Shown here one piece after another: positions 29,221-50,600 of a DNA stretch of 64,000 bases. The first letter of the stretch is position 1, and each line of letters begins with the position of its first letter. Source of the DNA: Scyliorhinus canicula (lineage: Eukaryota). The notes below the pieces were generated by a model that saw only the letters and a list, made by a program, of their open reading frames with translations, did no database searches and was not told the origin of the DNA. The position numbers and the translations under genes were made by a program. The stretch covers positions 19,005,327-19,069,326 of the forward strand of contig NC_052172.1 of the NCBI RefSeq assembly GCF_902713615.1, in the 5' to 3' direction.

Positions 29221-29291
29221 CTGCAACATCAACAAAATGGACAAAATCAAATGATCCTTGGGTCAAAGATTATTCACCGTCACGTCCAGCA

Positions 29292-29530
29292 TTTTTTATT
29301 TTATTTATTTATTTCATTTAGTGTACCCAATTAATTTTTTCCAATTAAGGGGCAATTTAGCCTGGCCAATCCACCTACTCTGCACATCTTTGGGTTGTGG
29401 GGGTGAAACCCACACAGCCACAGGGAGAATGTGCAAACTCCACACGGACAGTGACCCAGAGCCGGGATCGAACCTGGGACCTCGGTGCCGTGAGGCAACA
29501 GGGCTAACCCACTGCGCCACCGTGCTGCCC
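29292..29530 (-). mobile_element. HE1/V-SINE-like
   Basis: consensus; TSD CACGTCCAGCA. Confidence 0.9.
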
Positions 29531-29796
29531 ACGTCCAGCACTTATTACGCCTCCTTAATTTCCCTTGCCAGGGCGTTGGTGAGCCCCCTTCAAGTAGCTT
29601 GCTGGCCGTATCAGAGGGGCAATTAAGAACAAAGAAAATTACAGCACAGGAACAGGCCCTTCGGCCCTCTAAGCCTGTGCCGATCCAGATCCTTTATCTA
29701 AACCTGTCGCTTATTTTCCAAGGATCTACTTCCCTCTGTTCCCCGCCCGTTCATATATCTGTCTAGATGCATTAAGAGTCAACAACATTGTTGTAA

Positions 29797-30028
29797 GGGC
29801 AGCACGGTGGCACAGCGGTTAGCTCTGTTGCCTGAAGGTGCCGAGGTCCCAGGTTCGATCCTGGCCCCGGATCACTGTCCCTGTGGAGTTTGCACATTCT
29901 CCCCGTGTCTGCGTGGGTCTCACCCCCACAACCCAAAAAGGTGCAGGTTAGGTGGATTGGCCGCGCTAAATTGCCCCTTAATTGGGGAAAACAAAGAATT
30001 GGGTACTAATTTATATTGAAAAAAAATT
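29797..30028 (+). mobile_element. HE1/V-SINE-like
   Basis: consensus. Confidence 0.85.
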
Positions 30029-30977
30029 AATTTCAAAATAAGCGAACAGTTTCATTCTCAAACCGCTCGATGGCAACTTTCCTTTGGAGAATGTTCCCTC
30101 GGATCCTGACCTCCAGGAACGAGTTAACGAGACTTCTCTCAATGGTCACAGGCTGGGTATCTTGCTGCATGCCACAGCGTTTAAACAGCGACAAGTCGTT
30201 AATGCTGGAGTTTCTCATTAAACTCAAATCAATTGATTGGGTCACTTGATCAATGGGAACATTTAGAATCAGGTCCAGTTCATCAGCTGCATTCTTCAGA
30301 GCAGCTGGCAGCCAGATTGGATCAGTTTGAACAACTTCGACATCCTGTTCAACACTTTGTGCTTTCAAGTGTTTATCGGACTGAATAGTAGAGCATTACA
30401 ACGCGTCAATCTCCCCTCGGACAATTTCAAAAGGACGCTTTGTGGTTAACCCTCAGTATTAAGCCGATGCCTCCCCCTCCCCAGAGTCTGCGGCTGGAAG
30501 GGTTCAACCCCCCCCACGGGTGGGCTACAATTCCCGGACAGTCCCAGTCCTGGTCAATATTCATCCCACAACACAAAAGAAAAATCTCGATTGGTCATTG
30601 TCACAGTGCTGTGTGTGGGAGACTGCTGCGTGCAAACTGGTTTTCCAATCTTCCAACAGTAACCACAATGTGAGTGATTCAATTTGGTAGAGAGACAATG
30701 TAAGATAACGTGCATCATTTCTAAAGGAGATGCAGAGGGACCTGGGTGTATTAGTGTACAAGTCAGTGAAGGGGGCCGGACTTGCTGACAGCACAGTTAA
30801 TAGGAGCATACTGGACTTTATTAATGGAGACATTGAACACAAAAGCAAGAAGGTTACGCGAAAACCGTTACAACAACTCGATTTGGTGCAGACTCGATGG
30901 GCCGAATGGCCTGCTTCTGCACTGTAAATTCTACGGCTTCAAGTGGAGGACAGTGTGCAGTTCTAGGCGTTGCACTT

Positions 30978-31265
30978 GATAATGATAATCTTTATTATTG
31001 TCACAAGTAGGCTGACATTAACACTGCAATGAAGTTACTGTGAAAATCCCCTCGTCGCCACATTCTGGCGCCTGTTCGGGTACACGGAGGGTGAATTCAG
31101 AATGTCCAATTCACCTAACAGCACGTCTTTCGGGACTTGTGGGAGGAAAGCGGAGCACCCGGAGGAAACCCACGCAGACACGGGGAGAACGTGCAGACTC
31201 CGCGCAGACAGTGACCCAAGCCGGGAATCGAACTCTGAACAACAGTGCTAACCACTGTGCCGCCC
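30978..31265 (-). mobile_element. V-SINE-like
   Basis: same subfamily as 63632-63920. Confidence 0.8.
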
Positions 31266-31648
31266 GTACAGCATTCGAGAGGGCGTGGGAAAGACTCACA
31301 CGAATTGTTCCAGGCATGAGGGTCTCCAGTTAGGTGGATAGATTGGTGAATCGGAGATCTTTTCCTCGGAGAAGAGGGTTGAGAGGGGGAGATCTGGACA
31401 GAGTGGCTGGGGAGAAACTGTTCCCTTTGGTGGAAAGGTCGAGAACGAGGGGCCCCCCGGATTTAAGGTCATTGACAAAAGGAGCAATGGGGCGGGGCGG
31501 GGGGGGGGGCAGCAAGTGGATTGCGCCATTCAGAGAACCAGCACAAACACAAGAGGCCGAATGGCCTCCCTGAATGATGTGACCATCCTGTGATGAGCTA
31601 CGGAATGGATGAGGCACCATAGACAAACAGGAAGTCAGTGACTATTAC

Positions 31649-31829
31649 CTGTGCTGTTCCCACCTGTTCTGAAGCAATCGTCACAGACTCTGACAGCAGC
31701 GCTACCCCATCCCCGTTCCGGGACAGACATGGTTTTGGTGGAGCAGACGTCACAACAACCCTCTCCACAGGAGCGACAGTGATGTTTACGCTCTCCATCC
31801 TCAAAAGGTTTCTTGCACTGATGGCATTC
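31649..31829 (-). CDS. ZFYVE1-like exon 9, FYVE domain 1
   Basis: CHQC...RKHHCRSCGEGCCDVCS...VRVCDDC; CAG acceptor, CAG|GTAATA donor (a same-phase GT lies 15 nt inside); 181 nt, phase 0 to 1. Confidence 0.92.
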
Positions 31830-31877
31830 CTGTAAAAATGGCAACAATTTTAAAAAAAAATCAGGTCTTCCGTCACC

Positions 31878-32510
31878 ATAGAATCCCGACAGTGCAGACG
31901 GAGGCCATTCGGCCCATTGAGTCTGCACTGACCCTCTGAAATGAACACCCCACCCAAGGCCCATTCCCCACAACCCCACCCGACTGACCCCAAGGGGCAC
32001 TTTAGCATGTCTGAGCCACCTAACCTGCCCATCTTTGGACTGTGGGAGGAAACCGGAGCACCTGGAGGAAACCCACGCAGACACGGGGAGAATGTGCAAA
32101 CTCCACACAGACAGTGACCCAAGCCGGGAATCGAACCTGGGACCTCGGCGCCGTGAGGCAGCAGCGCTTTATTTTTTAAAAAAATTTTATTATTATAAAT
32201 TTAGCGTACCCAATTATTGTTTCCAATTAAGGGGCAATTTAGCGTGGCCAATCCACCTAACCTGCACATCTTTGGGTTGTGGGGGCGAAACCCACGCAGA
32301 CAGGGGGAGAATGTGCAAACTCCTCACGGACAGTGACCCAGAGCCGGGATTCGAACCCGGGTCCTCAGCGCCGTGAGGCAGCAGTGCTAACCACTGAAAT
32401 GAAAATGAAATGAAAATCGCTTATTGTCACGAGTCGGCTTCAAATGAAGTTACTGTGAAAAGCCCCTAGTCGCCACATTCCGGCGCCTGTTCGGGGAGGC
32501 TGGTACGGGA
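31878..32510 (-). mobile_element. cluster of three abutting SINEs
   Basis: two V-SINE copies and one TTTCA-tailed fragment, all on the minus strand. Confidence 0.8.
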
Positions 32511-33273
32511 CCCTTTCAGAGGATGTCCGGATGCGACACCAATTCCGCCAGCGATCTAGAGGGGGCGATGTTGGGGGAAGGCGGCCAGGTTCGCCGAAAC
32601 AAAACAAATCATTGGAACCAGTAAAGGACGAAGTTGCGATTTTCATCACCTTCCCATTCCCCATTCTCTGGAATTCCAATCCTTCAACCCCTCTTCCCCG
32701 AGACCCCGCCCCTTTAGCAGTCTGTCCAAACGTGTGGTTCGGAGTTAGGATTGGTTTGCTAATCGCTTCTGTCCGATGGCTATGTTAGAGGCCCTATAGA
32801 AATGAACGTTGTCGTGGTTCTCTGGCATCGCCAGCCTTGGCCAATCTGCAGTAGTGAAGGATGTTGCAGTGGGTAAATAACACAAGTGGCAATGTGGGCA
32901 CACCTGGCATCTATTGCCCACCTGTACTTGCCCCTGGAGAGGGAGGGGCGGTTTCTTCACCAGCCGCTTTCACATCTGACTGCAGCAGCCGTGTGACTTT
33001 TTCATTATTGCCAGGGAAAGAATGAACAAAAGATTTGCATTCATATAGCACCACAGGATGTCCCAATGTTTGAATTTGTGTACAGCAAGATCCGACAAAA
33101 AGCAATATGACAATAATCACACCACCTGTTTTAAAGATGTTGATCGAGGGAAAAATATTCACCAGAGAGAATGCCCCCCCCCACCCACACATCACCCACC
33201 CCCTAACCCACATCTCACCCCACCCTCCCCCCACCCACACACCACCCCCCCATCCCCACCCAACCCTCCCACC

Positions 33274-34962
33274 CAGTACTGACCCTCTGACAGTGCAGCA
33301 CTCCCTCAGTACTGACCCTCTGACAGTGCAGCGCTCCCTCAGTACTGACCCTCTGACAGTGCAGCACTCCCTCAGTACTGACCCTCTGACAGTGCGGCAC
33401 TCCCTCAGTACTGACCCTCTGACAGTGCGGGGCTCCCTCAGTACTGACCCTCTGACAGTGCAGCACTTCCGCAGTGCTGACCCTCTGACAGTGCAGCACG
33501 CCCTCAGTACTGACCCTCTGACAGTGCGGCACTCCCTCAGCACTGACCCTCTGACAGTGCGGTGCTCCCTCAGTACTGACCCTCTGACAGTGCGGCACTC
33601 CCTCCGTACTGACCCTCTGACAGTGCAGCACTCCCTCAGTACTGACCCTCTGACAGTGCGGCACTCCCTCAGTACTGACCCTCTGACAGTGCAGCACTCT
33701 CTCAGTACTGACCCTCTGACAGTGCGGCACTCCCTCAGTACTGACCCTCTGACAGTGCAGCTCTCCCTCAGTACTGACCCTCTGACAGTGCAGGGCACGC
33801 CCTCAGGGTAGCAGGCCCTCTGACAGTGCGTGCTCCCTCAGTACTGACCCTCTGACAGTGCGGCACTCCCTCAGTACTGACCCTCTGACAGTGCGGAACT
33901 CCCTCAGTACTGACCCTCTGACAGTGCGGCACTCCCTCACTGACCCTCTGACAGTGCAGCACTCCCTCAGTACTGACCCTCTAGCAGTGCGGGCGCTCCC
34001 TCACTGACCCTCTGACAGTGCGGCACTCCCTCAGTACTGACCCTCTGACAGTGCGGCACTCCCTCAGTACTGACCCTCTGACAGTGCGGCACTCCCTCAG
34101 TACTGACCCTCTGACGGTGCAGCACTCCCTCAGTACTGACCCTCTCACAGTGCGGCACTCCCTCAGTACTGACCCTCTGACAGTGCAGCACTCCCTCAGT
34201 ACTGACCCTCTCACAGTGTGCCTCTCCCTCAGTACTGACCCTCTGACAGTGCAGCACTCCCTCAGTACTGACCCTCTGACAGTGCGGCACTCCCTCAGTA
34301 CTGACCCTCTGACAGTGCGGCACTCCCTCAGTACTGACCCTCTGACAGTGCGGCACTCCCTCAGTACTGACCCTCTGACAGTGCAGCACTCCCTCAGTAC
34401 TGACCCTCTGACAGTGCGGCACTCCCTCAGTACTGACCCTCTGACAGTGCAGCACTCCCTCAGTACTGACCCTCTGACAGTGCGGCACTCCCTCAGTACT
34501 GACCCTCTGACAGTGCAGCACTCCCTCAGTACTGACCCTCTGACAGTGCGGCACTCCCTCAGTACTGACCCTCTGACACTGCAGCACTCCCTCAGTACTG
34601 ACCCTCTGACAGTGCGGCACTCCCTCAGTACTGACCCTCTGACAGTGCAGCACTCCCTCAGTACTGACCCTCTGACAGTGCGGCCCTCCCTCAGTACTGA
34701 CCCTCTGACAGTGCAGCACTCCCTCAGTACTGACCCTCTGACAGTGCGGCACTCCCTCAGTACTGACCCTCTGACAGTGCAGCACTCCCTCAGTACTGAC
34801 CCTCTGACAGTGCGGCCCTCCCTCAGTACTGACCCTCTGACAGTGCGGCACTCCCTCAGTACTGACCCTCTGACAGTGCAGCACTCCCTCAGTACTGACC
34901 CTCTGACAGTGCGGCACTCCCTCGGCACTGACCCTCTGACAGTGCGGCGCTCCCTCGGCACT
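33274..34962 (+). repeat. 33-bp minisatellite, array 2 (ZFYVE1-like intron 8)
   Basis: same unit. Confidence 0.98.
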
Positions 34963-35152
34963 GCAGTGGGAGTGTCGGCCAGGATTTGGTGTTGAATTCT
35001 CCGAGAGGGAACTGCAACCCGCTCACCTTTCACTTCCACGACAGGGACACCGATTTTGCTTTTCCATCCCTTCTGATCCAACGTTGGAGTCGCCCAGTTA
35101 ATGACAAGTAAGGGAAGAAGTTCTTTTGCATAAAAGAAAAAGGTTAACTCAC

Positions 35153-35323
35153 GGTGATCTGTGAATTGGGCCTCCAGTATTCCGGAGCCACCTGATCTGT
35201 TAACCAGGCTGTGATCGCCTTGGTTGGGCCTCTACTGTAATCGGTAACCGACTGGATCGCAAAGTTGACACCATCCAATACTCTCTGAGTTCCATTGCTA
35301 TTATCCTTCAAGAAGGCCTCATT
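35153..35323 (-). CDS. ZFYVE1-like exon 8
   Basis: NEAFLKDNSNGTQRVLDG...WLTDQVAPEYWRPNSQIT; CAG/GTGAGT borders; 171 nt, phase 0 to 0. Confidence 0.93.
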
Positions 35324-35954
35324 CTGAAATACACAAACAGAGATCGGCATTTCCTTCATGTCTTTCACAGGCACAGAGTATCCAAACGCTTTACATCTAA
35401 AGTACTTTTCAACATACAGTCACTGTTGTAATGTAGCCAATTGGTGCACAGCACAATCCCATGCACGAGACACAATTTGTTTTGAAGTGATGTTGACTGG
35501 GGCACAACAGCAGAGTGAACTCCCCAGTTCTGTTGTGCGATCCTTTCCACACCCACCCAAGGGGGGCCCGGCTTCAACGTCTCATCCTCAAGACGGCACC
35601 TCCGACAGCGCAGCGTTCCCTCGGGAGCACCAGCTGGAATGGGGAGGGAATTGAACCCGTAGCCTTGCGACACAATAAATCCACGTGGGAATCATCGTTT
35701 ACCACTTGCTGTACCGAACATATTCCTGTAAAAAACCCACTCCCCCAAGACAGGAACGCCAGCTGAGAAATCACGTTCACCTTTCCCATCCCGGGGTTTT
35801 CCCCCCTGCGGATCGCTGACCTCAATACGGGCTGGCGATCCGCTGTGGGTTACAGAGGCTAAAAAATTACAGCAATTAACTTGCACCTCATTAAATCTCT
35901 CATGTTCCCCATTATCATTCGCCCGCATCTTTTATCTTTTTGACCAAGGGATGG

Positions 35955-37437
35955 AGACACAAGAGCGCACGAGACAACAGCGTGCGCGCGAGACACAGCG
36001 CACGAGACAACAGCACACGCGCGAGTGCGAGACACAAGAGCGCGCGCTAGTAACAAGAGCGTGCACAAGTAACAAGAGCGCGCACAAGTAACAAGAGCGC
36101 GCACGAGTAACAAGAGCGCGCACGAGTAACAAGAGCGCGCACGAGTAACAAGAGCGCGCACGAGTAACAAGAGCACGCGAGACAGAAGCGCACGAGACAA
36201 CAGGACACACGAGAGACACGAGCGCGCGTGCGAGACAATAGTGTGCCCGCAAGACAACAGCGCGTGCAAGACACAAGAGAGCGCGAGACACAACAGTGCA
36301 CGAGACGACAGCGACGTGTGAGCGCGAGACACAAGAGCGCTCACGTGAGAGACAAGAGCACCAGTGAGACAGAGAGAAATAGCAAAAGAGACAGAGCACG
36401 AGCAGAGAGACAGAGCGCGAGCAGAGAGAGAGAGCGTGAGCAGAGAGAGAGAGCGCGAGCAGAGAGAGAGAGCGCGAGCAGAGAGAGAGAGCGCGAGCAG
36501 AGAGAGAGAGCGCGAGCAGAGAGAGAGAGCGAGCAGAGAGAGCGAGCAGAGAGAGAGCGAGCAGAGAGAGAGAGAGAGCAGAGAGAGAGCGAGCAGAGAG
36601 AGGAGAGAGCGAGCACAGAGAGAGAGCGAACACAGAGAGAGAGAGCGAACAGAGAGAGAGAGCAAGCAGAGAGAGAGAGAGAGCAGAGAGAGAGAGAGAG
36701 CGAGCAGAGAGAGAGAGCGCGAGCAGAGAGAGAGAGCGCGAGCAGAGAGAGAGAGCGCGAGCAGAGAGAGAGAGCGCGAGCAGAGAGAGAGAGCGAGCAG
36801 AGAGAGAGAGAGAGCGAGCAGAGAGAGAGAGCGCGAGCAGAGAGAGAGAGCGCGAGCAGAGAGAGAGAGCGCGAGCAGAGAGAGAGAGCGAGCAGAGAGA
36901 GAGAGAGAGCGAGCAGAGAGAGAGAGAGAGAGAGAGAGAGCAGAGAGAGAGAAAGAGCGAGCAGAGAGAGAGAGAGAGCAGAGAGAGAGAGCGCGAGCAG
37001 AGAGAGAGAGCGCGAGCAGAGAGAGAGAGCGCGAGCAGAGAGAGAGAGAGCGAGCAGAGAGAGAGAGCGAGCAGAGAGAGAGAGAGCGAGCAGAGAGAGA
37101 GAGAGCGCGAGTAGAGAGAGAGAGCGAGCAGAGAGAGAGAGAGAGCGAGCAGAGAGAGAGAGCGCGAGCAGAGAGAGAGAGCGCGAGCAGAGAGAGAGAG
37201 CGCGAGCAGAGAGAGAGAGGGCGAGCAGAGAGAGAGAGGGCGAGCAGAGAGAGAGAGAGCGAGCAGAGAGAGAGAGCGCGAGCAGAGAGAGAGAGCGAGC
37301 AGAGAGAGAGAGCGAGCAGAGAGAGAGAGCGCGAGCAGAGAGAGAGAGCGCGAGCAGAGAGAGAGCGCGAGCAGAGAGAGAGAGCGCGAGCAGAGAGAGC
37401 GAGCAGAGAGAGAGAGCGAGCAGAGAGAGAGAGAGAA
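35955..37437 (+). repeat. compound repeat: 19-bp ACAAGAGCGCGCACGAGTA units grading into GCGCGAGCA(GA)n
   Basis: visible periodicity, purine-rich strand. Confidence 0.95.
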
Positions 37438-37502
37438 AAACTAAAAAGGTAGAGCAAAAGAAAAATAAGGGGGTAAATCAGCATCACAATTTCAGTACAG
37501 AT

Positions 37503-37725
37503 AGGGCAGCACAGTGGCGCAGTGGTTACAACGCTGAAGTCCCAGGTTCGATCCCAGCTCTGGGTCACTGTCCGTGTGGAGTTTGCACATTCTCCCCGTG
37601 TCTGCGTGGGTTTCGCCCCCACAACCCAAAGATGTGCAGGGTAGGTGGATTGGCCATGCTAAATTGCCCCTTAATTGGAAAAAACAAAATTTAAAAATTG
37701 GGTTCTCTAAATTTATTTTTTAAAA
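37503..37725 (+). mobile_element. HE1/V-SINE-like
   Basis: consensus; TSD AATTTCAGTAC. Confidence 0.85.
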
Positions 37726-38714
37726 TAATTTCAGTACGGATAGTTTAATGCCTGGTCCATGCCTGTCACCCAACTCCCATGTGAACACGTTTGTCACCTT
37801 CTGGTCTCCTCGGGTTGTTCACAGACAGTTAGACACTTGTTCAGGCGATTCTCTTGCTCCTCTGACTGCTCTGCTGCCTACAGCCTGTCAGAAGCCATCA
37901 GCATCCAGGATACAGCCCCTGACAGATGGCCCCGAGGCAGCAAAGCTGTTTACAAGCCGTGTCTCTCTCACTCACTCACCTCACTGGCTGTGGGACCCAG
38001 TCCCAGCCTTGTTAACTCACCCACTGTACCGTGATGAGAGGGACGATGACACGGCAGGGGGGGTGGGGGAAGAGAGAGAGAGAGAGAGAGAGCCGACATC
38101 TGTCAACAATGGCAGGATGTACAGGCCCCAGGCGTTGGGACGGTCAGGGACATTCGGTGCCATATTGTTTGCGTCTCGACTTAGAACTGAGATTTGTGTT
38201 TAATGTTGGGCTGAGGGCAATGAAGTGTTTTCCCACCTGGATTTGTTTCCTCACAGGCCCCTCCGCCCCCACCCCCATTCGCCCCACCCCCGTGAGCCTG
38301 GCTCCCCAATGTCCCTCGATTGAATTTGTCGCCACCACACTCTCAGACAGTGCATCCCAAATCCTCGTCGCCCACTGCAAAAGGAGTTTTTTGTCCTCGT
38401 GTCACTTTTGCCAATCCGTATCATCTGATTGGATTAATTTATTTTGGGGGGGGGGGGTGACCAGATGACCTCCCACGGCCAACGGCCCTGCCCCCCACTC
38501 CCCCCAAGACATGTCACTCTTCATCGGTACCGCCCCCGTCCCCGTATAAATCAATACCCCCACGCACTCGATCCTCAATATTTTTCTCACGAGTAAACAT
38601 TGGGAGATTTTCTCTCCTCCCAGTTATCTCCTGAAGATTAAATCTTCGGCTCCCAGAGGACCCCCCCCCCCCCCACGTTGGGCAATAACCCAAAACGTCG
38701 TGTAGCAAACTCAC

Positions 38715-38832
38715 CCCGAGCCACACGTGTCTTAACTCGGGACGTACGACTGACCCTTCCGGATCCTGGTTTCCAATCCAGTGCTGTCTGCTACGGTAAA
38801 TAATGCCACAGGTCGAACATTCCAGGACATAC
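38715..38832 (-). CDS. ZFYVE1-like exon 7
   Basis: YVLECSTCGIIYRSRQHWIGNQDPEGSVVRPELRHVWLG; TAG/GTGAGT borders; 118 nt, phase 2 to 0. Confidence 0.93.
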
Positions 38833-39118
38833 CTAAGTAGCAAATGAAGACACATCAGGCCAAATATTTCCCATTTTCCTTTAATATTTTTCAGGAATTC
38901 AAGGACAGGGAAAGCACCCCGACGTTAGCCATGGTAAAGATCGGACCGAGCTTGGGCGGCAGAGAAACGGAGTCAGGGACGGACGATGACGATGAGGGAC
39001 GCCGACTGGGTTTTGGAAGATCCGTGGGACAACGGGAAGACGGGAGGGTGGGGGGTGGGGGGGGGGGGCGAGGATTTCCAGCGTCTGCAGCTTCCCTGGG
39101 GACGTGAGAGTTGGAGTA

Positions 39119-39300
39119 GGGGCTGGTTTAGCACAGTGGGCTAAACAGCTGGCTTGTAATGCAGAACGAGGCCAGCAGCGCGGGTTCAATTCCCGCACCA
39201 GCCTCCCCGAACAGGCGCCGGAATGTGGCGACTAGAGGCATTTCACAGAAACTTCATTGAAGCCGACTTGTGACAATAAGCGATTATTATTATTATTATA
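39119..39300 (+). mobile_element. short tRNA-SINE
   Basis: GGGGCTGGTTTAGCACAG head, (ATT)n tail. Confidence 0.85.
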
Positions 39301-39859
39301 TGGAGTTCATTAGCTTACAATGATGAAAGGAAGGATGGGCCTGCATTTGGATAGGGCCTTGGACCATGTAACGTTCCAAAGTGTTTTATAGTCGACAGAG
39401 CACATTTAGGTGCAGTCACTGCCGTGGGAAACAGAACAAAGTATGCACAGAAAGATCCCACAAATCCCTTTGTGATAAAGATTATTTTATTTGAGGGTTG
39501 TGATTGAGGGTTAACCTTTGAACAGGGCACCAGGCACCGCACAAAATAGTCGCCAAGGAGTCCGTCACCCAAAAGGGACCCTCGGTTTAACGTTTCCTCC
39601 GGGAGGTGATGCCCCCGACAGTGCGGCACTCCCACCGCGTCGCACAGGAAGGAAGGCTGGACAGGAGAGGGGCAGGGGATTCAAAATTCGGGAAGAACTC
39701 ATCGGGAAATCTCGAGGACAGGGTAGTTTCTCCAGCTGGATGGGAAAGGAACTGGGGCGCCGTCTCTTCCGTGGGTATAACAGGCAGCTATTCGGCCGGG
39801 AAACCCGCTCTCCACCTCTCTCTGCACAGCTGACTCCACCTTCACACCGACGACAGCAC

Positions 39860-40054
39860 GGGGACTGGTTTAGCACACTGGGCTAAATCGCTGGCTTTGA
39901 AAGCAGACCAAGGCAGGCCAGCAGCAGCGGGTTCAATTCCCGTACCAGCCTCCCCGAACAGGCGCCGGAATGTGGCAACTAGGGGCTTTTCACAGTAACT
40001 TCATTTGAAGCCTACTCGTGACAATAAGCGATTTTCATTTTCATTTTTCATTTC
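39860..40054 (+). mobile_element. short tRNA-SINE abutting the exon 6 donor
   Basis: full head-to-(TTTCA)n tail copy. Confidence 0.88.
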
Positions 40055-40060
40055 ACTCAC

Positions 40061-40158
40061 CCTGACCAGGCGTACGTTGCTAATCCAAACCACTTGCTGT
40101 CCGTTGATGCGGAGGTTTTGGGATTGACAGCCACCTCCAGGCCACGCTCGTAGCACAC
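40061..40158 (-). CDS. ZFYVE1-like exon 6
   Basis: VCYERGLEVAVNPKTSASTDSKWFGLATYAWSG; CAG/GTGAGT borders; 98 nt, phase 0 to 2. Confidence 0.93.
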
Positions 40159-40491
40159 CTGGATCAGATCAGAAGGTAGCTTCAGACTTCAGCGCTGCCT
40201 CCTCTTCCCCCTCCCTCCTTCCCTTATACTCCATACATTAGGGGTTGAGCAATAGGCCATTCAGCCCTTCCAAGCCTGCTCCACCATTCAATAAAATCAT
40301 GTGGTCACAACTCCATTTTGCCATCAGCTCCCCCTTGATTGTAATGTCCGACGAGCAGAATTGTGTTGTAGAAACTGATGGAGGATTGGAAAGTACATTT
40401 GCTTCCACCGCCTCGCTGCTGGCAACACGCCACCCTGACCTGGAAATATATCGGCCATTCCTCTATTGACACTGGGTCAAACTCCCTCTGT

Positions 40492-41492
40492 GGGTGGCAC
40501 AGTGGTTAGCACTGCTGCCTCACAGCACCAGGGACCCGGGTTCAATTCCGACCTCGGGTGTCTCTCTGCGGAGTCTGCACGTTCTCCCCGCGTCTGCGCG
40601 GGTTTCCTCCGGGTGCTCCGGTTTCCTCCCACATTCTAAGAGACGTGCAGGTTATGATGGATTGGCCGTGCTGAATTGCCGCTTAGTGTCCAACGGTTCG
40701 GTGGGGTTACGGGGATCGGGTAGGGAATGGGGCTCAGGTAGGGTTGTCTTTCGGAGGGCTGGTGCAGCTTCGATGGGCCGAATGGCCCTCTGTAATGTAG
40801 GGATTCTATGATTCCATCAGCACAGTGAGTGTATCTACATCACAGGGCCTGCAGCGGGTTCAAGAAGACAGCTCACCATCACCTTCTCCGGGGCAATTAG
40901 GGATGGGCAATAAAGGGCAGCACGGTGGCACAGTGGTTAGCATTGCTGCCTACGGCGCTGAGGACCCGGGTTCGAATCCCGGCCCTGGGTCACTGTCCGT
41001 GTGGAGTTTGCACATTCTCCCCGTGTCTGCGTGGGTTTCACCCCCACAACCCAAAGATGTGCCGGGTAGGTGGATTGGCCATGCTAAATTGCCCCTTAAA
41101 TTGGCAAAAAATAATTGGGTACGCTAAATTTAAAAAAAAAAAGGGATGGGCAATAAATGGAGGCCTCGCCCAGTGATGCCTGGTATCCAGGAAGAAATGA
41201 GGAAACAGAACTGTCTGTCTGTTAAAAGGGCAGCGCAGTGGTTAGCACTGCTGCCTCACCTAGCCGGGGTCCCGGGTTCGATTCCCGGCTTGGGTCACTG
41301 TCTGTGCGGAGTCCGCACGTTCTCCCCGTGTCTGCGTGGGTTTCCTCCGGGTGCTCCGGTTTCCTCCCACAAGTCCCAAAGATGTGCGGGTTAGGTGAGG
41401 TCATGGGGGAGCAGGCCTGGGTAGGGTGCTCTTTCAGAGGGTCAGTACAGAATCGATGGGCTGAATGGCCTCCTTCTGCGTGATGATTCTAT
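40492..41492 (+). mobile_element. three V-SINE copies (about 40492-40812, 40914-41142, 41227-41492) within LINE remnants
   Basis: consensus; middle copy has TSD GGGATGGGCAATAAA. Confidence 0.8.
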
Positions 41493-41517
41493 GAAACGCC
41501 ATTGGGAGACGCCTTAC

Positions 41518-41626
41518 CCGGCAGATCAGAACCTTGTTGTTGTACTGATGGGTGTATCGACATCGGCTCTTTGCAGTGTGAGCGACATTATCCTTCAAGT
41601 GGTTCATATTCTTTGTACAGCGAGCC
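41518..41626 (-). CDS. ZFYVE1-like exon 5
   Basis: ARCTKNMNHLKDNVAHTAKSRCRYTHQYNNKVLICR; AG/GTAAG borders; 109 nt, phase 2 to 0. Confidence 0.93.
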
Positions 41627-42610
41627 CTTCAACAATTAAAAAAAAACGGAACAGTAACATTTCCCCTCCTGGTTACTCTCTGCACCTCATTTACCGCAAC
41701 ACAGGCCTCTGGTTCACTGTCAGCTTGACGTAGAGCAGGGGCGGGTTACGTGGGTATTTTCCAGACCTGAGTGAGCGATGAGGAATGGAGTGGTGGCTTT
41801 GGGTCGTCTACACGGAAACAAGGAGGCGGAAGGGAGATTTAATTGAGGTGTAGCAAATTCTGATGGGGCCAGGATAGAGTGGACAGGGAGGACATGATTC
41901 CCTCAGCAGACAGGTCATTAACCAGGGGGCTGAGATTTTAAAATAATTGGGAGAAGGATTGGAGAAGATGGTGGGGGGATTTTCACCTGTGTTAGGGAGA
42001 ACTCGGAGATTATCGGCGGGGAAATCTCAAGCGTTAATGGGAACGCTTACTTTTATTTTGCTCTGGTGTGAGGTGACAAGTGAAACTTCAGTGTGAATAC
42101 ATTTATTAGGGTGGCACGGTGGCGCAGTGGTTAGCACGGCTGCCTCGCAGCGCCAGGGACCCGGGTTTGCACCTTCGGCCCGTGTCTGCGTGGGTTTTAC
42201 CCCCACAACCCAAAAGATGTGCAGAGTAAGCGGATTGGCCACATTAAATTGGCCCGTAATTGGGAAGAAAACAGAATTGGGACATGCTGTCAAAGTTTTT
42301 CACCTTGCACCCATCAGAACAAATGGCAGAATGCCAAATTTCAAACAATCTCAATTTATACTCATCGGAGAAAAGGGTGATGATTGGTCAGGAGGTTGAC
42401 GCTGAATGGCTGGGGAGCTGCCATGTCTCTGATCGGGGGGGGGGGGACACACGAGGTGCGCAATGTGACCCGGAGCTTGTCCAAGGTTTTGCCCGCGACT
42501 TTTGCTCCATTGCTGGAGCGCGGAAAGCTCAGAAGGCGGGGGAGCGAAGGAAAGAACAGAGCCCCCTCCACCCCCTCCTCCCAGCCGCGCACTCTAGGAC
42601 TGTCGCTCAC

Positions 42611-42717
42611 CCACAGCTCAGACAGACGTTGGAGCAGCTGAAGTATTCATCGGGGAAGAACGAGCTGGTCGTAATTCGATCGTCCGTAATCTCCCCGTTA
42701 AACCTCATACTCAGAGC
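42611..42717 (-). CDS. ZFYVE1-like exon 4
   Basis: ALSMRFNGEITDDRITTSSFFPDEYFSCSNVCLSCG; AG/GTGAG borders; 107 nt, phase 0 to 2. Confidence 0.93.
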
Positions 42718-43338
42718 CTGGATTGAAAAGAAACCACACACGCGGGGAGTCACAAAGAGAGAGAACATTCATTCTTATGGCGCCTTGCACATCCTCCGCT
42801 TCGGAGCCAATGAAGCATTTACTTTCCTTGACGTCCAGTCGCTGTTGTACGTAGGAAACGCTGCAGCCAACCACCGCACAGCACGATCCCGCAAAGAATA
42901 GTGCCCAGATTATCATGTTTAAGTGAGTGTCCCACCCCCCCATCTCCCACCCCCCCACCTCCCCCACCCCCACCTCCTCACACCCTCCCCATCTCCTCAC
43001 ACACTCCCCACCTCCCCACACCCCCACCCCACCACCTCCCCCTCCCCACACCCTCCCCACCTCCCCACACCCCCACCTCCCCCTCCCCACACCCCCCCAC
43101 ATCCCCACCCCACCACCTCCCCCGCCTCCCCCTCCCCGACAACCCCCCCCACCACCCCCCCCACCCCACACACCCCCACCCACACCCCCCCACCACCACC
43201 TCCCCCTCCCCACACCCCCCCCCCACACCCCCCCATCCCCCAAGCACAGCAGACCATTCAGCCCATCGTGCGCACATTGGCTCAGGTAAAGCGGACCCAT
43301 CGGTCGCCCTCGACGCAACCCCTCCCCACCCGCGTTAC

Positions 43339-43556
43339 CTTCAATACGTTGTAGACGATAGCGGGCGGCCTCCGAGAGCGGGTGGACGTGTTGCTTGCCC
43401 GCCTGCACACCACCTCCAAAAACCCACTGAAGTTGGTGGGTGGCAGGGTGGTCCTGGTGCCCACGTACTCGACCGAGTTGAAGGCTTCGGTGCTCAAACT
43501 CAACTGGTGGAACCTCTTCTGGAGCAGTTGCTCGGCACCTCCTGGGGTCCGGGAGT
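43339..43556 (-). CDS. ZFYVE1-like exon 3
   Basis: EQLLQKRF...EAFNSVEYVGTRTTLPPTNFSG...VYNVLK; CAG acceptor, AAG|GTAACG donor; 218 nt, phase 1 to 0. Confidence 0.93.
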
Positions 43557-43714
43557 CTGCGAGGGGGGGAGGGGGGGAGAAGGTCAACACAGCAGCTAAA
43601 CCCGGCGTCCATGTGATTTTGTACATTATAGGTTTTTTAAAATTCATTCACAGGGCACCCCTGGTGGGGTCAGGACTTATTGCTCAACCCCAACGGTGCT
43701 GACCGACCACCGAT

Positions 43715-44418
43715 TGTGATGCTCGGGCCCATTTTGGAGAGGTGGTTAAGAGTCGACAACATGTCTTATGAAGAAAAGGTTTTATTTTATTTATTTTTTT
43801 ATAAATTTAGATTAGCCAATTATTTTTTTTTTCCAATTAAGGGGCAATTTAGCGTGGCCAATCCACCTACTCTGCACATTTTTGGATTGTGGGAGCGAAA
43901 CCCACGCAGACACGGGGAGAATGTGCAAACTCCACACGGACAGTGATCCAGAGCTGGGATCGAACCTGGGACCTCAGCGCCGTGGGGCGGTTGTGCTAAC
44001 CACTAGGCCACCGTGCTGCCCTTTATGAAGAAAGGTTGAGGGAGCTCGGGGCTTTGCTCACTGGAGCGAAGAAGGCAGAGAGGTGACTTGATAGAGGTGT
44101 ACAAGGTGATGAGAGGCATGGATAGAGTGGATAACCAGAGACTTTTCCCCAGGCCGGAAATGGCAGTCAAGAGGGGACATCATTTTAAGGTGATTGGAGG
44201 GAAGATGTCAGAGGTCGGTTCTTTACCCAGAGAGCGGTGGGTTTGTGGAATGCACTGCCAGCAGAGGTTGTGGAGTCAGAGTCATTAGGGACATTTAAGT
44301 GACTCTTAGACAGGCACATGGACAGCAGTAAATTGAAGGGGTGTAGGTTAGGTTGATCTTAGATTGGGATAAATGGTCGGCACAACATCGTGGGCCGAAG
44401 GGCCTGTACTGTTCTATA
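43715..44418 (+). mobile_element. CR1-like LINE 3' fragment interrupted by a minus-strand SINE (about 43780-44021)
   Basis: RGDLIEVYKVMRGMDRVD; TTATGAAGAAA duplicated around the SINE. Confidence 0.85.
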
Positions 44419-44786
44419 ACATCGCTGTGGGTCTGGAGTCACGTGTAGGCCAGACCAGTTAAGTACAACAGATTTCCTTCCCTAAAGGGAGACATTAGTG
44501 AATCAGATGGGATTTTACGGACAATTGGTGATGGTTGTCACGGTCGCCGTTACTGAAACCAACTTTCAATCCCAGATTTTATTCATCGAATTTGAATTCC
44601 ACGGGGTGGGATTTGAACCCGTGTCCCCCGGAGCGTTAACCTGGGGCCTTCTGGGCTACCTGATCCAGTGACAACACCAACCTCTCCGTGTCCCAGCTAT
44701 CAGAGGAATAATCTTATCAACCACCAGCCCTGAAGCGAGAGTTAGTGTCAAACTGGGAATCAATAAGCATCCTGGATCGAGCCAAT

Positions 44787-45008
44787 GGGTGGCGCAGTGG
44801 TTAGCACTGCTGCCTCACAGCACTGAGGTCCCAGGTTCCGGGTCCCGACCCCGGGTCACTGTCTGTGTGGAGTTTGCACATTCTCCCTGTGTCTGCATGG
44901 GTTTCACCCCCACAACCCAAAGGTATGCAGGGTAGGTGGATTGGCCACGCTAAATTGCCCCTTAATTGGAAAAAATGAATTGGGTACTCTAAATAAAAAA
45001 AAAAAGAA
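44787..45008 (+). mobile_element. HE1/V-SINE-like
   Basis: consensus. Confidence 0.85.
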
Positions 45009-45136
45009 ACTCTACCCACCATTACACTCCGCTGGTCACCTGGGCTGGATTTACGACCTCACAGGTCAGGGTCAACCCCATGACCTTTTCCCCCATCCCC
45101 GTCAGGTCAAGACAACCCCCCCCCCCCCCCCACACT

Positions 45137-47150
45137 CCAGCAGCACTCACAGCCGCCCAGCAGCACTCACCGCCGCCCAGCAGCACTCACCGCAGCCCAG
45201 CAGCACTCACCGCAGCCCAGCCGCCCAGCAGCACTCACCACAGCCCAGCAGCACTCACCGCCGCCCAGCAGCACTCACAGCCGCCCAGCAGCACTCACAG
45301 CCGCCCAGCAGCACTCACCGCAGCCCAGCAGCACTCACAGCAGCCCAGCAGCACTCACAGCCGCCCAGCAGCACTCACCACAGCCCAGCAGCACTCACCG
45401 CAGCCCAGCAGCACTCACAGCAGCCCAGCAGCACTCACCACAGCCCAGCAGCCCAGCAGCACTCACAGCCGCCCAGCAGCACTCACCACAGCCCAGCAGC
45501 ACTCACCGCAGCCCAGCAGCACTCACAGCAGCCCAGCAGCACTCACAGCAGCCCAGCAGCACTCACAGCAGCCCAGCAGCACTCACAGCCGCCCAGCAGC
45601 ACTCACCACAGCCCAGCAGCCCAGCAGCACTCACCACAGCCCAGCAGCCAGCAGCACTCACCGCAGCCCAGCAGCCCAGCAGCACTCACCGCAGCCCAGC
45701 AGCACTCACCGCAGCCCAGCAGCACTCACCGCAGCCCAGCAGCCCTCACAGTAGCCCAGCAGCCCTCACAGTAGCCCAGCAGCACTCACAGCCGCCCAGC
45801 AGCCCTCACAGTAGCCCAGCAGCACTCACAGCTGCCCAGCAGCACTCACCGCAGCCCAGCCGCCCAGCAGCACTCACAGCCACCCAGCAGCACTCACCGC
45901 AGCCCAGCAGCACTCACCGCAGCCCAGCAGCACTCACAGCCACCCAGCAGCACTCACCGCAGCCCAGCAGCACTCACCGCAGCCCAGCAGCACTCACAGC
46001 CGCCCAGCAGCACTCACAGCCGCCCAGCAGCACTCACAGCCGCCCAGCAGCACTCACCGCAGCCCAGCAGCACTCACCGCAGCCCAGCAGCACTCACAGC
46101 AGCCCAGCAGCACTCACCGCCGCCCAGCAGCCCAGCCGCCCAGCAGCCCAGCAGCACTCACAGCCGCCCAGCAGCACTCACAGCCGCCCAGCAGCACTCA
46201 CCGCAGCCCAGCAGCCCAGCAGCACTCACAGCCGCCCAGCAGCACTCACAGCCGCCCAGCAGCACTCACAGCCGCCCAGCAGCACTCACAGCCGCCCAGC
46301 AGCACTCACCGCAGCCCAGCAGCCCAGCAGCACTCACAGCCGCCCAGCAGCACTCACCGCCGCCCAGCAGCACTCACAGCCGCCCAGCAGCACTCACCAC
46401 AGCCCAGCCGCCCAGCAGCACTCACAGCCGCCCAGCAGCACTCACCGCAGCCCAGCTGCACTCACCGCAGCCCAGCAGCACTCACCGCAGCCCAGCAGCC
46501 CTCACAGTAGCCCAGCAGCCCTCACAGTAGCCCAGCAGCACTCACAGCCGCCCAGCAGCACTCACCGCAGCCCAGCAGCACTCACCGCCGCTCAGCAGCC
46601 CAGCAGCACTCACAGCCGCTCAGCAGCACTCACCGCAGCCCAGCAGCACTCACCGCAGCCCAGCAGCCCAGCAGCACTCACCGCAGCCCAGCAGCCCAGC
46701 ACCCCGGCAGCACTCACAGCCGCTCAGCAGCACTCACCGCAGCCCAGCAGCCCAGCAGCACTCACCGCCGCTCAGCAGCACTCACCGCAGCCCAGCAGCA
46801 CTCACCACAGCCCAGCAGCACTCACAGTAGCCCAGCAGCACTCACCGCAGCCCAGCAGCACTCACCGCAGCCCAGCAGCACTCACCGCAGCCCAGCAGCA
46901 CTCACCGCAGCCCTCACCGCAGCCCAGCAGCACTCACCGCAGCCCAGCAGCACTCACCGCAGCCCAGCAGCACTCACCGCAGCCCAGCAGCACTCACCGC
47001 AGCCCAGCAGCACTCACCGCAGCCCAGCAGCACTCACCGCCGCCCAGCAGCCCTCACAGTAGCCCAGCAGCACTCACAGCAGCCCAGCAGCCCAGCAGCA
47101 CTCACAGCAGCACTCACCGCCGCCCAGCAGCACTCACCACAGCCCAGCAG
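45137..47150 (-). repeat. 20-bp minisatellite made of the exon 2 splice donor (CTGCTGGGCTGCG|GTGAGTG)
   Basis: about 100 units; the first unit overlaps the last 13 nt of exon 2. Confidence 0.97.
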
Positions 47151-47642
47151 CTTGGTGTTGGAGGTCTCGTGAAAGACGAGCAGTGCAGGCCCCAGGCTGG
47201 ACAGGGGCACCTCCAGGCCGCAGCGGTCGGACATGGCCTTCAGCTCGCTGGTGAAGTGTTTGAGGTAGGCCTGGGAGGCGTTGCCCAGGAACCGGAAGAG
47301 GTCGTTGTGTAGCCGCTCGGCCCGAGTCCGGTACACCACCATGTCGGAGACTGCCAGCACCTTCAGCAGCAACCTCATCCGCTGGTTCTGCTTGCTGGTG
47401 GCCCCCAGCAGGCCCTCCGTGTCCAGGAGGATGAGGGACAGCGAGGGGTCGAAGGCAGCCCACACCCCCACGGTGCAGGAGTCCTGGGTTTCCGAGGTGC
47501 GGAATACCTCGTGGCCGTTGAAGAAGGTGGCGTTTAAAGTGTGAGATTTCCCATCCCCCGTATTGCCGAAAATGGAAAGGACTTTCACGGCCTTGTTGCT
47601 GGGAATCCCCAGCCTCTCCAGGAAACTTTCCTCTTCCATCAC
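47138..47642 (-). CDS. ZFYVE1-like exon 2, P-loop NTPase domain
   Basis: KVLSIFGNTGDGKSHTLN...LLDTEGLLG...LLLKVLAVSD...FHET matches the ZFYVE1 GBP/atlastin-like domain; AAG|GTG acceptor, G|GTGAGT donor; 505 nt, phase 0 to 1. Confidence 0.95.
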
Positions 47643-50600
47643 CTTCCAAAGAATGAAGCACATCGTTAGAAAGTTCAAGCTTAGGGACCGGCACAAAAAT
47701 CCAGGCTGACATACCCCCTGGGCGTAAAGTCCCAGAGTACCACTTCGGAGGAGAGCAGAGCAGTTTCTCCCTGCCAGTCATCACCGCCACCCCCCCCCCC
47801 CCCCCCCCCCCCCGGGCCACCACCACACACCCCCTCTTCCCCCCCCCCCTCCCCTCCCCACCCCCACCTCCTCCCAATAACCCTGGTCAACATTTAACTT
47901 TAAAAAGACACCATCACCAAAATCAAATTTTCTGCTCTCTACGGCATTGTTGCCTGTGGGATCTTGCTGTGCGCAAAGTATAGATCGCCAACTATTTCCC
48001 GCTGGTTTTGGGGGGGGGGGGGGGGGGGGGTCTCAGATATGGGTCACAGTAGAACAATTAGAGCCAGCCCTTTTCAGGGGTAAGGTTAGGGAACATTCCT
48101 ACACACACGCACACGCACACACTTCCCTGGATGAGCGCAGCTCCAACAACACTCAAGAAGCTCGACACCATCCAGGGCAAAGCAGCACCGCTTGATTGGC
48201 ACCCCATCCATCACCTTCTACACCTTCAGGGGCTGTTTAGCACAGGGCTAAATCGCTGGCCTTGAAAGCAGACCAAGCAGGCCAGCAGCACGGTTCAATT
48301 CCCGTACCAGCCTCCCCGGACAGGCACCGCAATGTGGCGACTAGGGGCTTTTCACAGTAACTTCACTTGAAGCCTACTTGTGACAATAAGCAATTTGCAT
48401 TTGCAACATTCACTCCCTCCACCACTGACCCACAGTGGCAGCCGTGTGTACCGTCTACAGGATGCACAGCAGCAACTCACCAACACAGCACCTTCCAAAT
48501 CCACGGCCCCTACCAAAGGCAGCAGACATATGGGAACACGCTGTCAAAATCCTGGAACTTCCTCCCGGACAGCACGGTGCTGCGTGGGTTTCCTCCGGGT
48601 GCTCCGGTTTCCTCCCACGAAAGACGTGCTTGTTAGGTGAATTGGACATTCTGAATTCTCCTTCTGTGACCCGAACAGGCGCCGGAATGTGGCGACGAGG
48701 GGATTTTCACAGTAACATCATCGCAGTGTTAATGTAAGCCTACTTGTGACAATAATAAAGATTATAATAATAAAGGTGATGGCCCTTTTAAGGGGGCAAT
48801 TAAGGATGGGCAATAAATAGCCAGTGATGTCCACACCCCATAGATGAATTGTTTAAAAACTCAAAGGGTGGTCAGAATTTTGGAACTTCTTTCCTTAAAT
48901 GGTTAGTGATGCTCCGACTGTTGTTGATTTTGAAGCAGTTTGTTGGGTTTTGGTTATCCATGCGTATCGAGGGACATGGGGCAAAGGTGGGCGTACGGAA
49001 TTAGGTCATAGATGAGACAGGATCTCACCGATTGGCAGAGGGGCTGAATTGGCCTCCTTCAGATCCCAAGCTGCCTGTCAGCCCTCAAATCAGTCACTGT
49101 CCACCCCCAAATTCTAGTGATCCCTTCACAAATTAATAAATGTTCTTTCACGAACTTCACACTCTCCAGCCCGTCAGTCACAGTGGGTCAGAAACCTTCC
49201 CCTGGAATCCATGTGCACCCTCCCCAGAGGCACGCAGCGTGGGAACATATCCGTGGAAAACAGACAGGCAATGGAGCAAAAAATCCCCATCAACGTCCAG
49301 GCCCTGGGGCAATCCAACAAGAGCAGCATTTACTTCCAATTGCGAGTCTGCACTTACAATGATTTACTTCATGCATGACTTACGTCCAACATATGTCCCC
49401 TACACGGGTGTCATTACCATGTTGCTACAGATTCTGTCCCTGGGCATCGCCGCTGCTGAAGAATCTCATTTAATTGCCCCTCGCTAGCAGGGGCATCAAT
49501 TGGCGGCAGAATTATATCCCGCAGTTAGAACAGCAGTTCAGGCTGCTTAACCGGGGATGTTAGGGCTCAGTTCCATCTCCTTAGCACAGCAGCAACTCCT
49601 CCCTCAACAGCACCTTCCAGACCCGGGATCTCTACCATCAGCAAGACCGAGACGGCAGGTACCTGGGAACCCCACCACCTGGAGCTGCCCCTTTGAGTCA
49701 CTCACCATCCCGACTTGGAAATATATCAGCCGTTCCTTATCGGCCGTTCCTTCACTGTCGCGGGGGGGGGGGGCAAAATCCCGGAACTCCCCTCCCTAAC
49801 AGCACGGTGGGTGCACCCACACCACACGGTGGGTTCAAGGTGGTGGTGGAAGATGCAATTCGGGATGGGTAATAAATGCCAGCCGAGTCCATCGATGTCC
49901 ACATCCCGTAAACAAAGGAAACAGATGTGGGAAACTCAACTGCCCCAGGAAGGGGGAATACAGAGACGAGCACATTTGTACTCGCTCCTTTACAATCCTC
50001 GGGATACTCCGCTTCCCACATTTTCCACCGTCTGCTGTCAGGGCCTCAGAATGAGTGGGTCCGAGACTCTGCTCCGATCCCCTCACCTTTTGGAGATTAG
50101 CCAATGGGGGGGGGAGGTTCCTGATTAGATGGGACCAATGGCACCATCGTCACTAGACTCCTGGGGCTGTGACCACAGAAGAACTGAGCGTGAATCCTGC
50201 AAATTCAGCCCAGGTTGGATTGGGTCGAGGACGGCTCGCTTCATCCATATTGGCAGCTTCGTAAAGGCAGTTAACTGGTGTTGGGGTAAGTACCGGGGTG
50301 GGCTTGCATTTATACTGCACATTCCACAACTTCTCAAAGTGAATCCCAGACTTAACACTTTAGGAACACAGCGGATGATGTAATGTACAGAGACACGCCA
50401 GTCAGTTTATGCACTGCAAGCTCCCACAGCAATGTGACAAATGGGCAGATCAGGTCGTGGGGTAAACATTGTTTCCCAAGCTGGGAGGACTCCCCAGCTC
50501 CTCCTCGACATGTTGGTCGCCCAATTCAAGAGGGGGGGGGGGGCAGACGGGTAACGTCCCATCTAAAGACGGTGTCTGGTGACAGAGCAGCACTCCCCTC

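What the first reader, a model, noticed from the sequence alone, without database searches (positions are those of the whole stretch)
45137..47150. A 5' splice site amplified about 100 times: the minisatellite unit is the exon 2/intron 2 junction
Seen: on the gene strand the 20-bp unit CTGCTGGGCTG(C/T)G|GTGAGTG equals the last 13 exon bases plus the first 7 intron bases, giving about 2 kb of near-consensus donors (GCG|GTGAGT, GCT|GTGAGT) right after the real one. Decoys at +20 and +32 shift the frame; the one at +60 (exon end 47078) is in frame and would add 20 aa after the NTPase core; reading on past 47034-47036 hits TGA. Inference: a U1-binding decoy array whose copy number could tune productive splicing versus nonsense-mediated decay.
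Basis: partly seen in the sequence, partly recalled or inferred. Interest (0 to 1): 0.75.

Follow-up and report, generated by a model that had tools for sequence, protein, structure and literature searches.

The report
Splice-donor minisatellite in shark ZFYVE1-like intron
The last 13 bases of an exon plus its splice donor have been copied about 95 times in tandem into the following intron of a shark ZFYVE1-like gene; this is a large new example of a kind of repeat already known from human genes, and it is most likely tolerated rather than useful.

Summary
A 20-bp minisatellite (45137-47151, 97 TRF copies, 94 GTGAG motifs) lies on the gene (minus) strand. Its first unit is the last 13 nt of exon 2 plus the first 7 nt of intron 2 of a ZFYVE1/DFCP1-like gene. 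Fifty-two decoys match U1 as well as the real donor.

The exon end encodes a conserved LLG. The phase-1 intron sits at this position in orthologues that have no array. So the junction was copied into the intron, not the reverse.

This is the known exon-boundary minisatellite class: human F7 IVS7, IFI6, CBS, LMNB2 and PDGF (PMC1557585). In those genes only the most upstream donor, or the first two or three, is used.

The scan has already noted at least seven similar arrays in other genes of this same genome (FPGT, ARL16, LAMTOR1, MHC-I, PDCD11 and others). About 34% of this window is minisatellite, so such arrays are expected by chance.

The proposed function, copy-number tuning of splicing against NMD, has no evidence for it and precedent weighs against it.

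Verdict: a new member of a known kind, of low to moderate interest.

The parts
47138..47642 (-). Exon 2 of the ZFYVE1/DFCP1-like gene (P-loop NTPase core). The 3' end is firm; the 5' end is inferred from the AG at 47644-47643.
   Evidence: Pfam GBP N-terminal domain, E=1.9e-5. 69% identity over 167 aa to an annotated pufferfish ZFYVE1-family protein, ending at LLG. 500 homologues with E<=1e-10.
47132..47140 (-). Authentic 5' splice site GTG|GTGAGT. The exon ends at 47138 in phase 1.
   Evidence: Joining 47138 to 43556 gives ...LLGC-D-SRTPGGAEQLLQKRF, collinear with the spliced orthologue to within one residue. 42 homologous genomic ORFs read LLGxG..., as expected for a G|GT donor at the same place.
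45137..47151 (-). 20-bp minisatellite with 94 donor-bearing units. It makes up 56% of intron 2, and its first unit overlaps the last 13-14 nt of exon 2.
   Evidence: TRF; unit census; pattern search against shuffles.
47112..47120 (-). Decoy donor +20 (GCG|GTGAGT). Same -1..+6 U1 match as the real donor. It shifts the frame and gives a stop in exon 3.
47100..47108 (-). Decoy donor +32 (GCT|GTGAGT), inside a truncated 12-bp unit. It shifts the frame.
47072..47080 (-). Decoy donor +60 (GCT|GTGAGT). It is the only decoy that keeps the frame without a stop. It would insert 20 residues and change Asp to Tyr.
47034..47036 (-). First in-frame TGA on read-through. It is contained in every transcript that would use a decoy beyond +100.
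45116..45131 (-). G16 tract that closes the array.
43557..45136 (-). The non-repeat remainder of intron 2. It holds an inverted pair of SINE-like elements (43822-44012 and 44788-44980) and the polypyrimidine tract and AG acceptor (43557-43580).
43339..43556 (-). Exon 3 (218 nt). It completes the split codon.
   Evidence: Aligns to residues 177-215 of the spliced orthologue P0011. AG at 43558-43557 and GT at 43338-43337.

Best explanation
This is a lineage-specific exon-boundary minisatellite.

Origin: a 20-bp segment spanning the ancestral exon 2/intron 2 junction of a ZFYVE1-like gene was duplicated in tandem, by replication slippage or unequal exchange. It then expanded inside the intron to about 95 units. 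Continuing exchange among units kept them alike.

Why it persists: the vertebrate splicing machinery, working from the defined exon, takes the most upstream donor when identical donors follow one another. The rest of the array is therefore removed with the intron. Any leak to decoys is nearly always out of frame or carries the TGA at 47036-47034, so it would be removed by nonsense-mediated decay.

It is a tolerated by-product of a very minisatellite-rich genome, not a regulator.

Shown here: the anatomy, the direction of copying, the conservation of the intron without the array, and the frame consequences.

Inferred: the mutational mechanism, first-donor use in vivo, and neutrality.
For: 1. 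Array anatomy.

2. Direction of copying. The first 9 nt of the unit encode the conserved LLG. Exon 2 aligns to an annotated orthologue up to LLG, and exon 3 follows collinearly.

3. The intron is older than the array. Locus L001 has ...CTCGGTCATG|GTGAGA with an intron of about 77 nt and no repeat. L002 has CTGCTGGGTCACA|GTACGT with no repeat. Of the 120 best homologues, 42 are genomic ORFs that read LLGxG.

4. Signs of turnover. There are 24 unit variants. Two variable positions occur in all four combinations (26/20/6/5 units). Units of 12, 28, 36 and 44 bp arise from slips of an 8-nt sub-repeat. The exact junction 20-mer recurs 4 more times deep in the array.

5. Nothing marks the real donor out. 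RNA folding is no better than shuffles (z=0.10). No AG in the array has a pyrimidine tract before it.

6. Precedent. In F7 IVS7, identical pseudo-sites are functional but silent, and the upstream-most site is chosen. IFI6 and CBS also use the two nearest pseudo-sites. LMNB2 and PDGF use only the real one (PMC1557585).

7. Genome context. 34% of the window is minisatellite. The scan holds at least 7 similar junction arrays in the same genome, some reported with first-donor RNA evidence (unchecked leads).
Against: No RNA data could be obtained for this locus, so first-donor use rests on homology and precedent.

The unit is short (20 bp). In the two human cases where the two nearest pseudo-sites are used as well (IFI6, CBS), some leak occurs. 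Here the +20 decoy is as strong as the real donor.

The orthologues I compared are distant (78% identity at best). The array could therefore be shared by close relatives and be older than I assume.

In-vitro work with duplicated strong sites has sometimes favoured the site nearer the 3' splice site (from memory). The F7 paper also notes that earlier duplicated-site studies gave opposite results.

Neutrality cannot be shown from one sequence.
Confidence: 0.74

Rival explanations
1. The array is a U1-binding decoy field whose copy number sets the ratio of productive splicing to frame-shifted, NMD-destined transcripts. It would act as a heritable rheostat on ZFYVE1-like expression.
For: 52 decoys have the same -1..+6 complementarity to U1 as the real donor. 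Two strong alternative sites are both bound by U1 in complex E (PMC3413131). All decoys but one give a premature stop. Human CBS and IFI6 do use proximal pseudo-sites.
Against: The array is not present in the two orthologous loci that could be read. In F7, pseudo-sites with complementarity raised to a consensus value of 91 did not compete, and surplus U1 is purged before commitment. Only the nearest one or two decoys are ever used in known cases, so copy number beyond a few units should not matter. Comparable arrays sit in many unrelated genes of this genome, which fits mutation pressure better than design.
Confidence: 0.07
2. Constitutive leak without regulation. As in IFI6 and CBS, the nearest decoys (+20, +32, +60) are used at an appreciable fixed rate. 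This gives NMD substrates and a minor isoform with a 20-residue insert, a mild cost rather than a function.
For: The +20 decoy equals the real donor in U1 match and lies only 20 nt away. [quoted passage not shown] The +60 product is in frame.
Against: F7, LMNB2 and PDGF use only the real donor. The scan's notes on other arrays of this genome report only the first donor in RNA (unchecked). The +32 and +60 sites have T at -1 and are weaker.
Confidence: 0.15
3. Assembly artefact. The array, or most of its length, was produced by mis-assembly of a shorter repeat.
For: Another array in the same window runs into a 500-N gap (55117-55616), so arrays are hard to assemble here.
Against: There are 24 different unit variants in a non-periodic order. 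There is only one unit with a single-base deletion, and the flanks are clean on both sides. Many similar arrays occur across the genome.
Confidence: 0.04

Closest known systems
Human F7 intron 7 37-bp VNTR (Borensztajn et al. 2006, PMC1557585)
   Same: The first monomer spans the exon-intron boundary. The donor is reiterated identically in the following monomers, and all copies face one acceptor. The model says the most upstream site wins.
   Different: F7 has 5-9 copies of 37 bp with 4 exon bases. Here there are about 95 copies of 20 bp with 13 exon bases. Donor use has been measured in F7 but not here.
Human IFI6 (6-16) intron 2 minisatellite (Turri et al. 1995, as summarised in PMC1557585)
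   Same: A short-unit array gives 25 pseudo-donors right after the real one. It is the closest case in unit size and donor density.
   Different: In IFI6 the two nearest pseudo-sites are used constitutively. By my recollection of the original paper (not held in the library), these keep the frame. Here the nearest decoys shift the frame.
Human CBS intron 13 31-bp VNTR, LMNB2 100-bp repeat and PDGF intron 4 81-bp repeat (all cited in PMC1557585)
   Same: The exon/intron junction is reiterated in an intronic minisatellite. In CBS, copy number has been associated with enzyme activity (title of Lievers 2001, seen).
   Different: They have 10-20 copies and longer units. They are polymorphic in humans; polymorphism here is unknown.
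Other donor minisatellites of this same genome noted by the scan (FPGT, ARL16, LAMTOR1, MHC class I, PDCD11, HEI10)
   Same: The architecture is the same: exon end plus donor copied tens to hundreds of times into the intron.
   Different: They lie in other genes, with other unit sequences and lengths. Those notes are AI reports that I did not re-test.

Membership tests
Exon-boundary (splice-donor) minisatellite, F7 IVS7 / IFI6 / CBS type | The first monomer of a head-to-tail array spans the exon-intron boundary | tested here: met
   The array reaches 47151 and the exon ends at 47138, giving 13 exon nt plus 7 intron nt in unit 1.
Exon-boundary (splice-donor) minisatellite, F7 IVS7 / IFI6 / CBS type | The donor sequence is reiterated in the following monomers | tested here: met
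   93 further GTGAG motifs. 52 have the same -1..+6 as the real donor, and 4 whole units are identical to the junction 20-mer.
Exon-boundary (splice-donor) minisatellite, F7 IVS7 / IFI6 / CBS type | The junction is ancestral and the repeat derives from it | tested here: met
   The LLG codons and the phase-1 intron are conserved in orthologues without an array.
Exon-boundary (splice-donor) minisatellite, F7 IVS7 / IFI6 / CBS type | Only the most upstream donor (or the first two or three) is used in mRNA | not testable with these tools
No same-species protein or transcript appeared in the protein search (best hit 78% identity).
Exon-boundary (splice-donor) minisatellite, F7 IVS7 / IFI6 / CBS type | Copy number varies between individuals (VNTR) | not testable with these tools
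   Only one assembly is in hand.
Regulatory pseudo-5'-splice-site / U1 decoy element | The element is conserved at the orthologous site in other species | tested here: not met
   L001 and L002 keep the intron position but have no repeat. Both are distant relatives; close relatives were not available.
Regulatory pseudo-5'-splice-site / U1 decoy element | Splicing outcome depends on the decoys or their number | not testable with these tools
   This needs RNA data or minigenes.
ZFYVE1/DFCP1 protein family (host gene) | GBP-like P-loop NTPase followed by two C-terminal FYVE fingers | tested here: met
   Pfam GBP on exon 2. FYVE at E=2.7e-15 and E=7.6e-19 on the exons in 31635-32108 and 27910-28200.

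The most novel reading that the evidence does not exclude
Junction-derived donor arrays may be more than random accidents in this shark genome. G-rich GGTGAGT-type junctions on the non-template strand (the array is 50% G on the gene strand) would then be preferred seeds for minisatellite birth, for instance through transcription-linked R-loops. The resulting copy-number variation would measurably change the share of unproductive (NMD) splicing of the host gene, here the second ZFYVE1 paralogue.
Probability: 0.06. Interest if true: 0.65.

Novelty: new member of a known kind. Interest (0 to 1): 0.27.

Why it matters
Taken alone it matters little. It adds one more gene, in a shark, to a class described in human F7, IFI6, CBS, LMNB2 and PDGF.

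Its value is as part of a set. With about 95 donors, half of them as good as the real one, and with sister arrays of 35 to 360 units elsewhere in the same genome, it offers a natural stress test of the rule that the most upstream donor wins. It also shows how much donor redundancy vertebrate exon definition can absorb.

If RNA data showed leak proportional to array length, it would be a rare natural example of a VNTR acting through unproductive splicing.

Tried and rejected
Which donors are used was not measured.

2. Same-species or close-relative sequences. The protein word search with exon 2 gave 78% identity at best. The array's age and polymorphism could not be assessed.

3. Further protein searches. 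The chance of seeing it among hundreds of fish orthologues was low, and an annotation would add little to the homology argument.

4. Joined models. Exons were searched one by one by reference. Joined translations were made only inside my own scripts, to check frames.

5. Masking of decoys by RNA structure. Rejected: folding energy equals that of shuffles (z=0.10).

6. A dispersed repeat family that merely landed beside the exon. Rejected for this window: the unit occurs nowhere outside the array and its first 9 nt are conserved coding sequence.

7. Internal acceptors creating mini-exons. Rejected: none of the 100 AGs in the array has a pyrimidine-rich run before it.

8. Literature. The original IFI6 paper is not held. 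A search for catshark tandem-repeat literature gave nothing relevant.

9. Human sequence.

Full report
**Observation**

Tandem Repeats Finder reports a single array at 45137-47151: period 20, 97.4 copies, 83% matches, 10% indels, score 2346. Read on the minus strand, the units are CTGCTGGGCTG(C/T)G followed by GTGAGTG. A search for the commonest 20-mer with up to 3 mismatches finds 92 copies. All lie inside 45144-47150, against 0.01 expected from shuffles, and none lies elsewhere in the window.

**Host gene and junction**

The minus strand carries a ZFYVE1/DFCP1-like gene.
- The exon ending at 47138 hits the GBP-type NTPase domain.
- Two downstream exons (in 31635-32108 and 27910-28200) hit FYVE with E=2.7e-15 and 7.6e-19.
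- Exon 2 is 69% identical over 167 residues to an annotated pufferfish ZFYVE1-family protein, and the match ends at ...KLLG.
- Exon 3 (43556-43339) aligns to the residues that follow directly in that spliced protein.
- Joining 47138 to 43556 reads ...LLGC-D-SRTPGGAEQLLQKRF. This is collinear with the orthologue to within one residue.

The exon therefore ends at 47138 in phase 1, and the intron begins with GT at 47137-47136. The first repeat unit consists of 13 exon bases and 7 intron bases.

**Direction of copying**

The first nine bases of the unit encode the conserved Leu-Leu-Gly, so they are ancestral coding sequence.

The intron is older than the array.
- Among the 120 best homologues of exon 2, 42 are genomic ORFs that run on as LLGxG... 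This is what a G|GT donor at the same phase-1 position gives. Two annotated spliced proteins continue with D.
- L001 has ...CTCGGTCATG|GTGAGA, an intron of about 77 nt and then the next exon.
- L002 has CTGCTGGGTCACA|GTACGT.
- Neither locus has any repeat.

The junction was therefore copied into the intron; the exon end was not built from a repeat. Both loci are distant (78% identity), so I cannot date the array.

**Anatomy of the array**

- It has 94 units ending in GTGAG(T/G)G. Of these, 77 are 20 bp. The rest are 12, 27, 28, 36 or 44 bp, mostly through slips of an internal 8-nt sub-repeat.
- There are 24 variants in a non-periodic order.
- Two variable positions occur in all four combinations (26, 20, 6 and 5 units). 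They are unit position 10 (T/G) and position 13 (G/T), the -1 base of the donor. This points to exchange among units or recurrent mutation.
- The exact junction 20-mer recurs four more times deep in the array.
- The TGCG-to-TGTG difference between the commonest unit and the exon copy is a CpG transition and is synonymous (Cys).
- The gene strand of the array is 50% G and 5% A.
- The array ends in a G16 tract (45116-45131) and fills 56% of the 3581-nt intron.

**Donor strength and consequences**

Counting complementarity to the U1 5' end, the real donor GTG|GTGAGT pairs at -1 to +6.
- 52 decoys do the same (44 GCG|GTGAGT and 8 GTG|GTGAGT).
- 34 have T at -1.
- 7 have G at +6.

Frame consequences:
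- Use of +20 (exon end 47118) or +32 (47106) shifts the frame and meets a stop in exon 3.
- +60 (47078) is in frame and stop-free. It would insert 20 residues and change the split codon from Asp to Tyr.
- +100 is out of frame.
- Every decoy further on includes the in-frame TGA at 47036-47034.

Nothing in the sequence sets the real donor apart. Exon 2's end plus the first 238 nt of the array folds no better than shuffles (z=0.10). None of the 100 AG dinucleotides in the array is preceded by a pyrimidine-rich run, so internal acceptors are unlikely.

**What is known**

Borensztajn et al. 2006 (PMC1557585) describe exactly this arrangement as a class: minisatellites whose first monomer spans an exon-intron boundary, so that the donor is reiterated in the intron.

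| Gene | Array | Donor use |
|---|---|---|
| F7 IVS7 | 37 bp, 5-9 copies | only the upstream donor |
| IFI6 (6-16) | 25 pseudo-sites | the two nearest also used |
| CBS IVS13 | 15-20 copies | two pseudo-sites also used |
| LMNB2 | 100 bp, 10-15 copies | only the real donor |
| PDGF intron 4 | 81 bp, 16-18 copies | only the real donor |

[quoted passage not shown] Only a perfect-consensus site shifted choice.

Hodson et al. 2012 (PMC3413131) showed that two strong alternative sites are both bound by U1 in complex E, and that the surplus U1 is displaced on formation of complex A. U1 binding to the decoys here is therefore plausible. Precedent does not, however, predict that distant decoys or their number change the outcome.

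**Genome context**

TRF arrays with score of at least 200 cover about 22 kb of this 64-kb window, or 34%. They form 13 or more arrays, four of them inside introns of this gene.

The scan's own notes (AI notes that I did not re-test) name the genome as the small-spotted catshark. They list the same architecture in FPGT, ARL16, LAMTOR1, an MHC class I gene, PDCD11 and HEI10, and a donor-like array behind a receptor gene's stop codon. For ARL16, PDCD11 and the MHC gene they report that RNA shows only the first donor in use. So the scan has found this before on other DNA of the same genome.

A rough estimate follows. It is an inference that uses general figures of about 2x10^5 donors and 4x10^9 bp.
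- A 20-bp founder placed at random spans a donor usefully at about 13 positions. That gives about 6.5x10^-4 per array.
- With 10^5 to 10^6 arrays in the genome, tens to hundreds of junction arrays are expected without any selection for them.
- Within this gene the chance is about 0.6% per array.

**Conclusion**

The most likely account is a lineage-specific, tolerated exon-boundary minisatellite. It arose by duplication of the junction and grew by slippage and unequal exchange. The gene works because the first donor after the defined exon is used, and because nearly every mis-splice would be an NMD substrate.

It has nothing in its favour beyond the presence of good U1 sites.

**What could not be done**

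- No same-species or closely related sequence was reachable.
- The large protein search was not used.

Noticed in passing
window 20073-22674, 33274-34963, 52288-55116, 55954-56752: One 33-bp minisatellite family (rotations and reverse complement of the same unit) forms four separate arrays of 24-86 copies. One of them runs into the 500-N gap at 55117-55616. It looks like a dispersed, perhaps transposon-borne, array family.
   Followed up: no
whole window: About 34% of the 64 kb lies in minisatellite arrays with periods of 17-43 bp. Besides those above, they sit at 254-2103, 11921-15506, 16660-19116, 25351-25978, 36034-37436, 59180-60400 and 60475-61249. This is an unusually repeat-dense region.
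   Followed up: partly
window 43822-44012 and 44788-44980: An inverted pair of SINE-like elements (84-88% complementary, about 800 nt apart) lies in the non-repeat part of intron 2. It could form a long RNA hairpin in the pre-mRNA.
   Followed up: partly
window 27910-47642 (gene), exon 2: Homologues of exon 2 fall into two motif groups. One has YRTRAERLHNDMF.. (72-78% identity to the window). The other, canonical ZFYVE1-like, has YRTHADRLH(D/N)DLFKFL (62-69%). The window gene belongs to the first group, which suggests a second ZFYVE1 paralogue.
   Followed up: partly
window 47790-47875 and 43014-43232: Long G-rich tracts on the gene strand lie just upstream of exon 2 and about 100 nt into intron 3. 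Together with the 50%-G donor array, all three introns around exons 2-3 have G-rich non-template DNA next to the exons.
   Followed up: no
L001:852-928: In one orthologue (unknown vertebrate, Logan run SRR32377442) the intron that holds the 2-kb array here is only about 77 nt long.
   Followed up: partly
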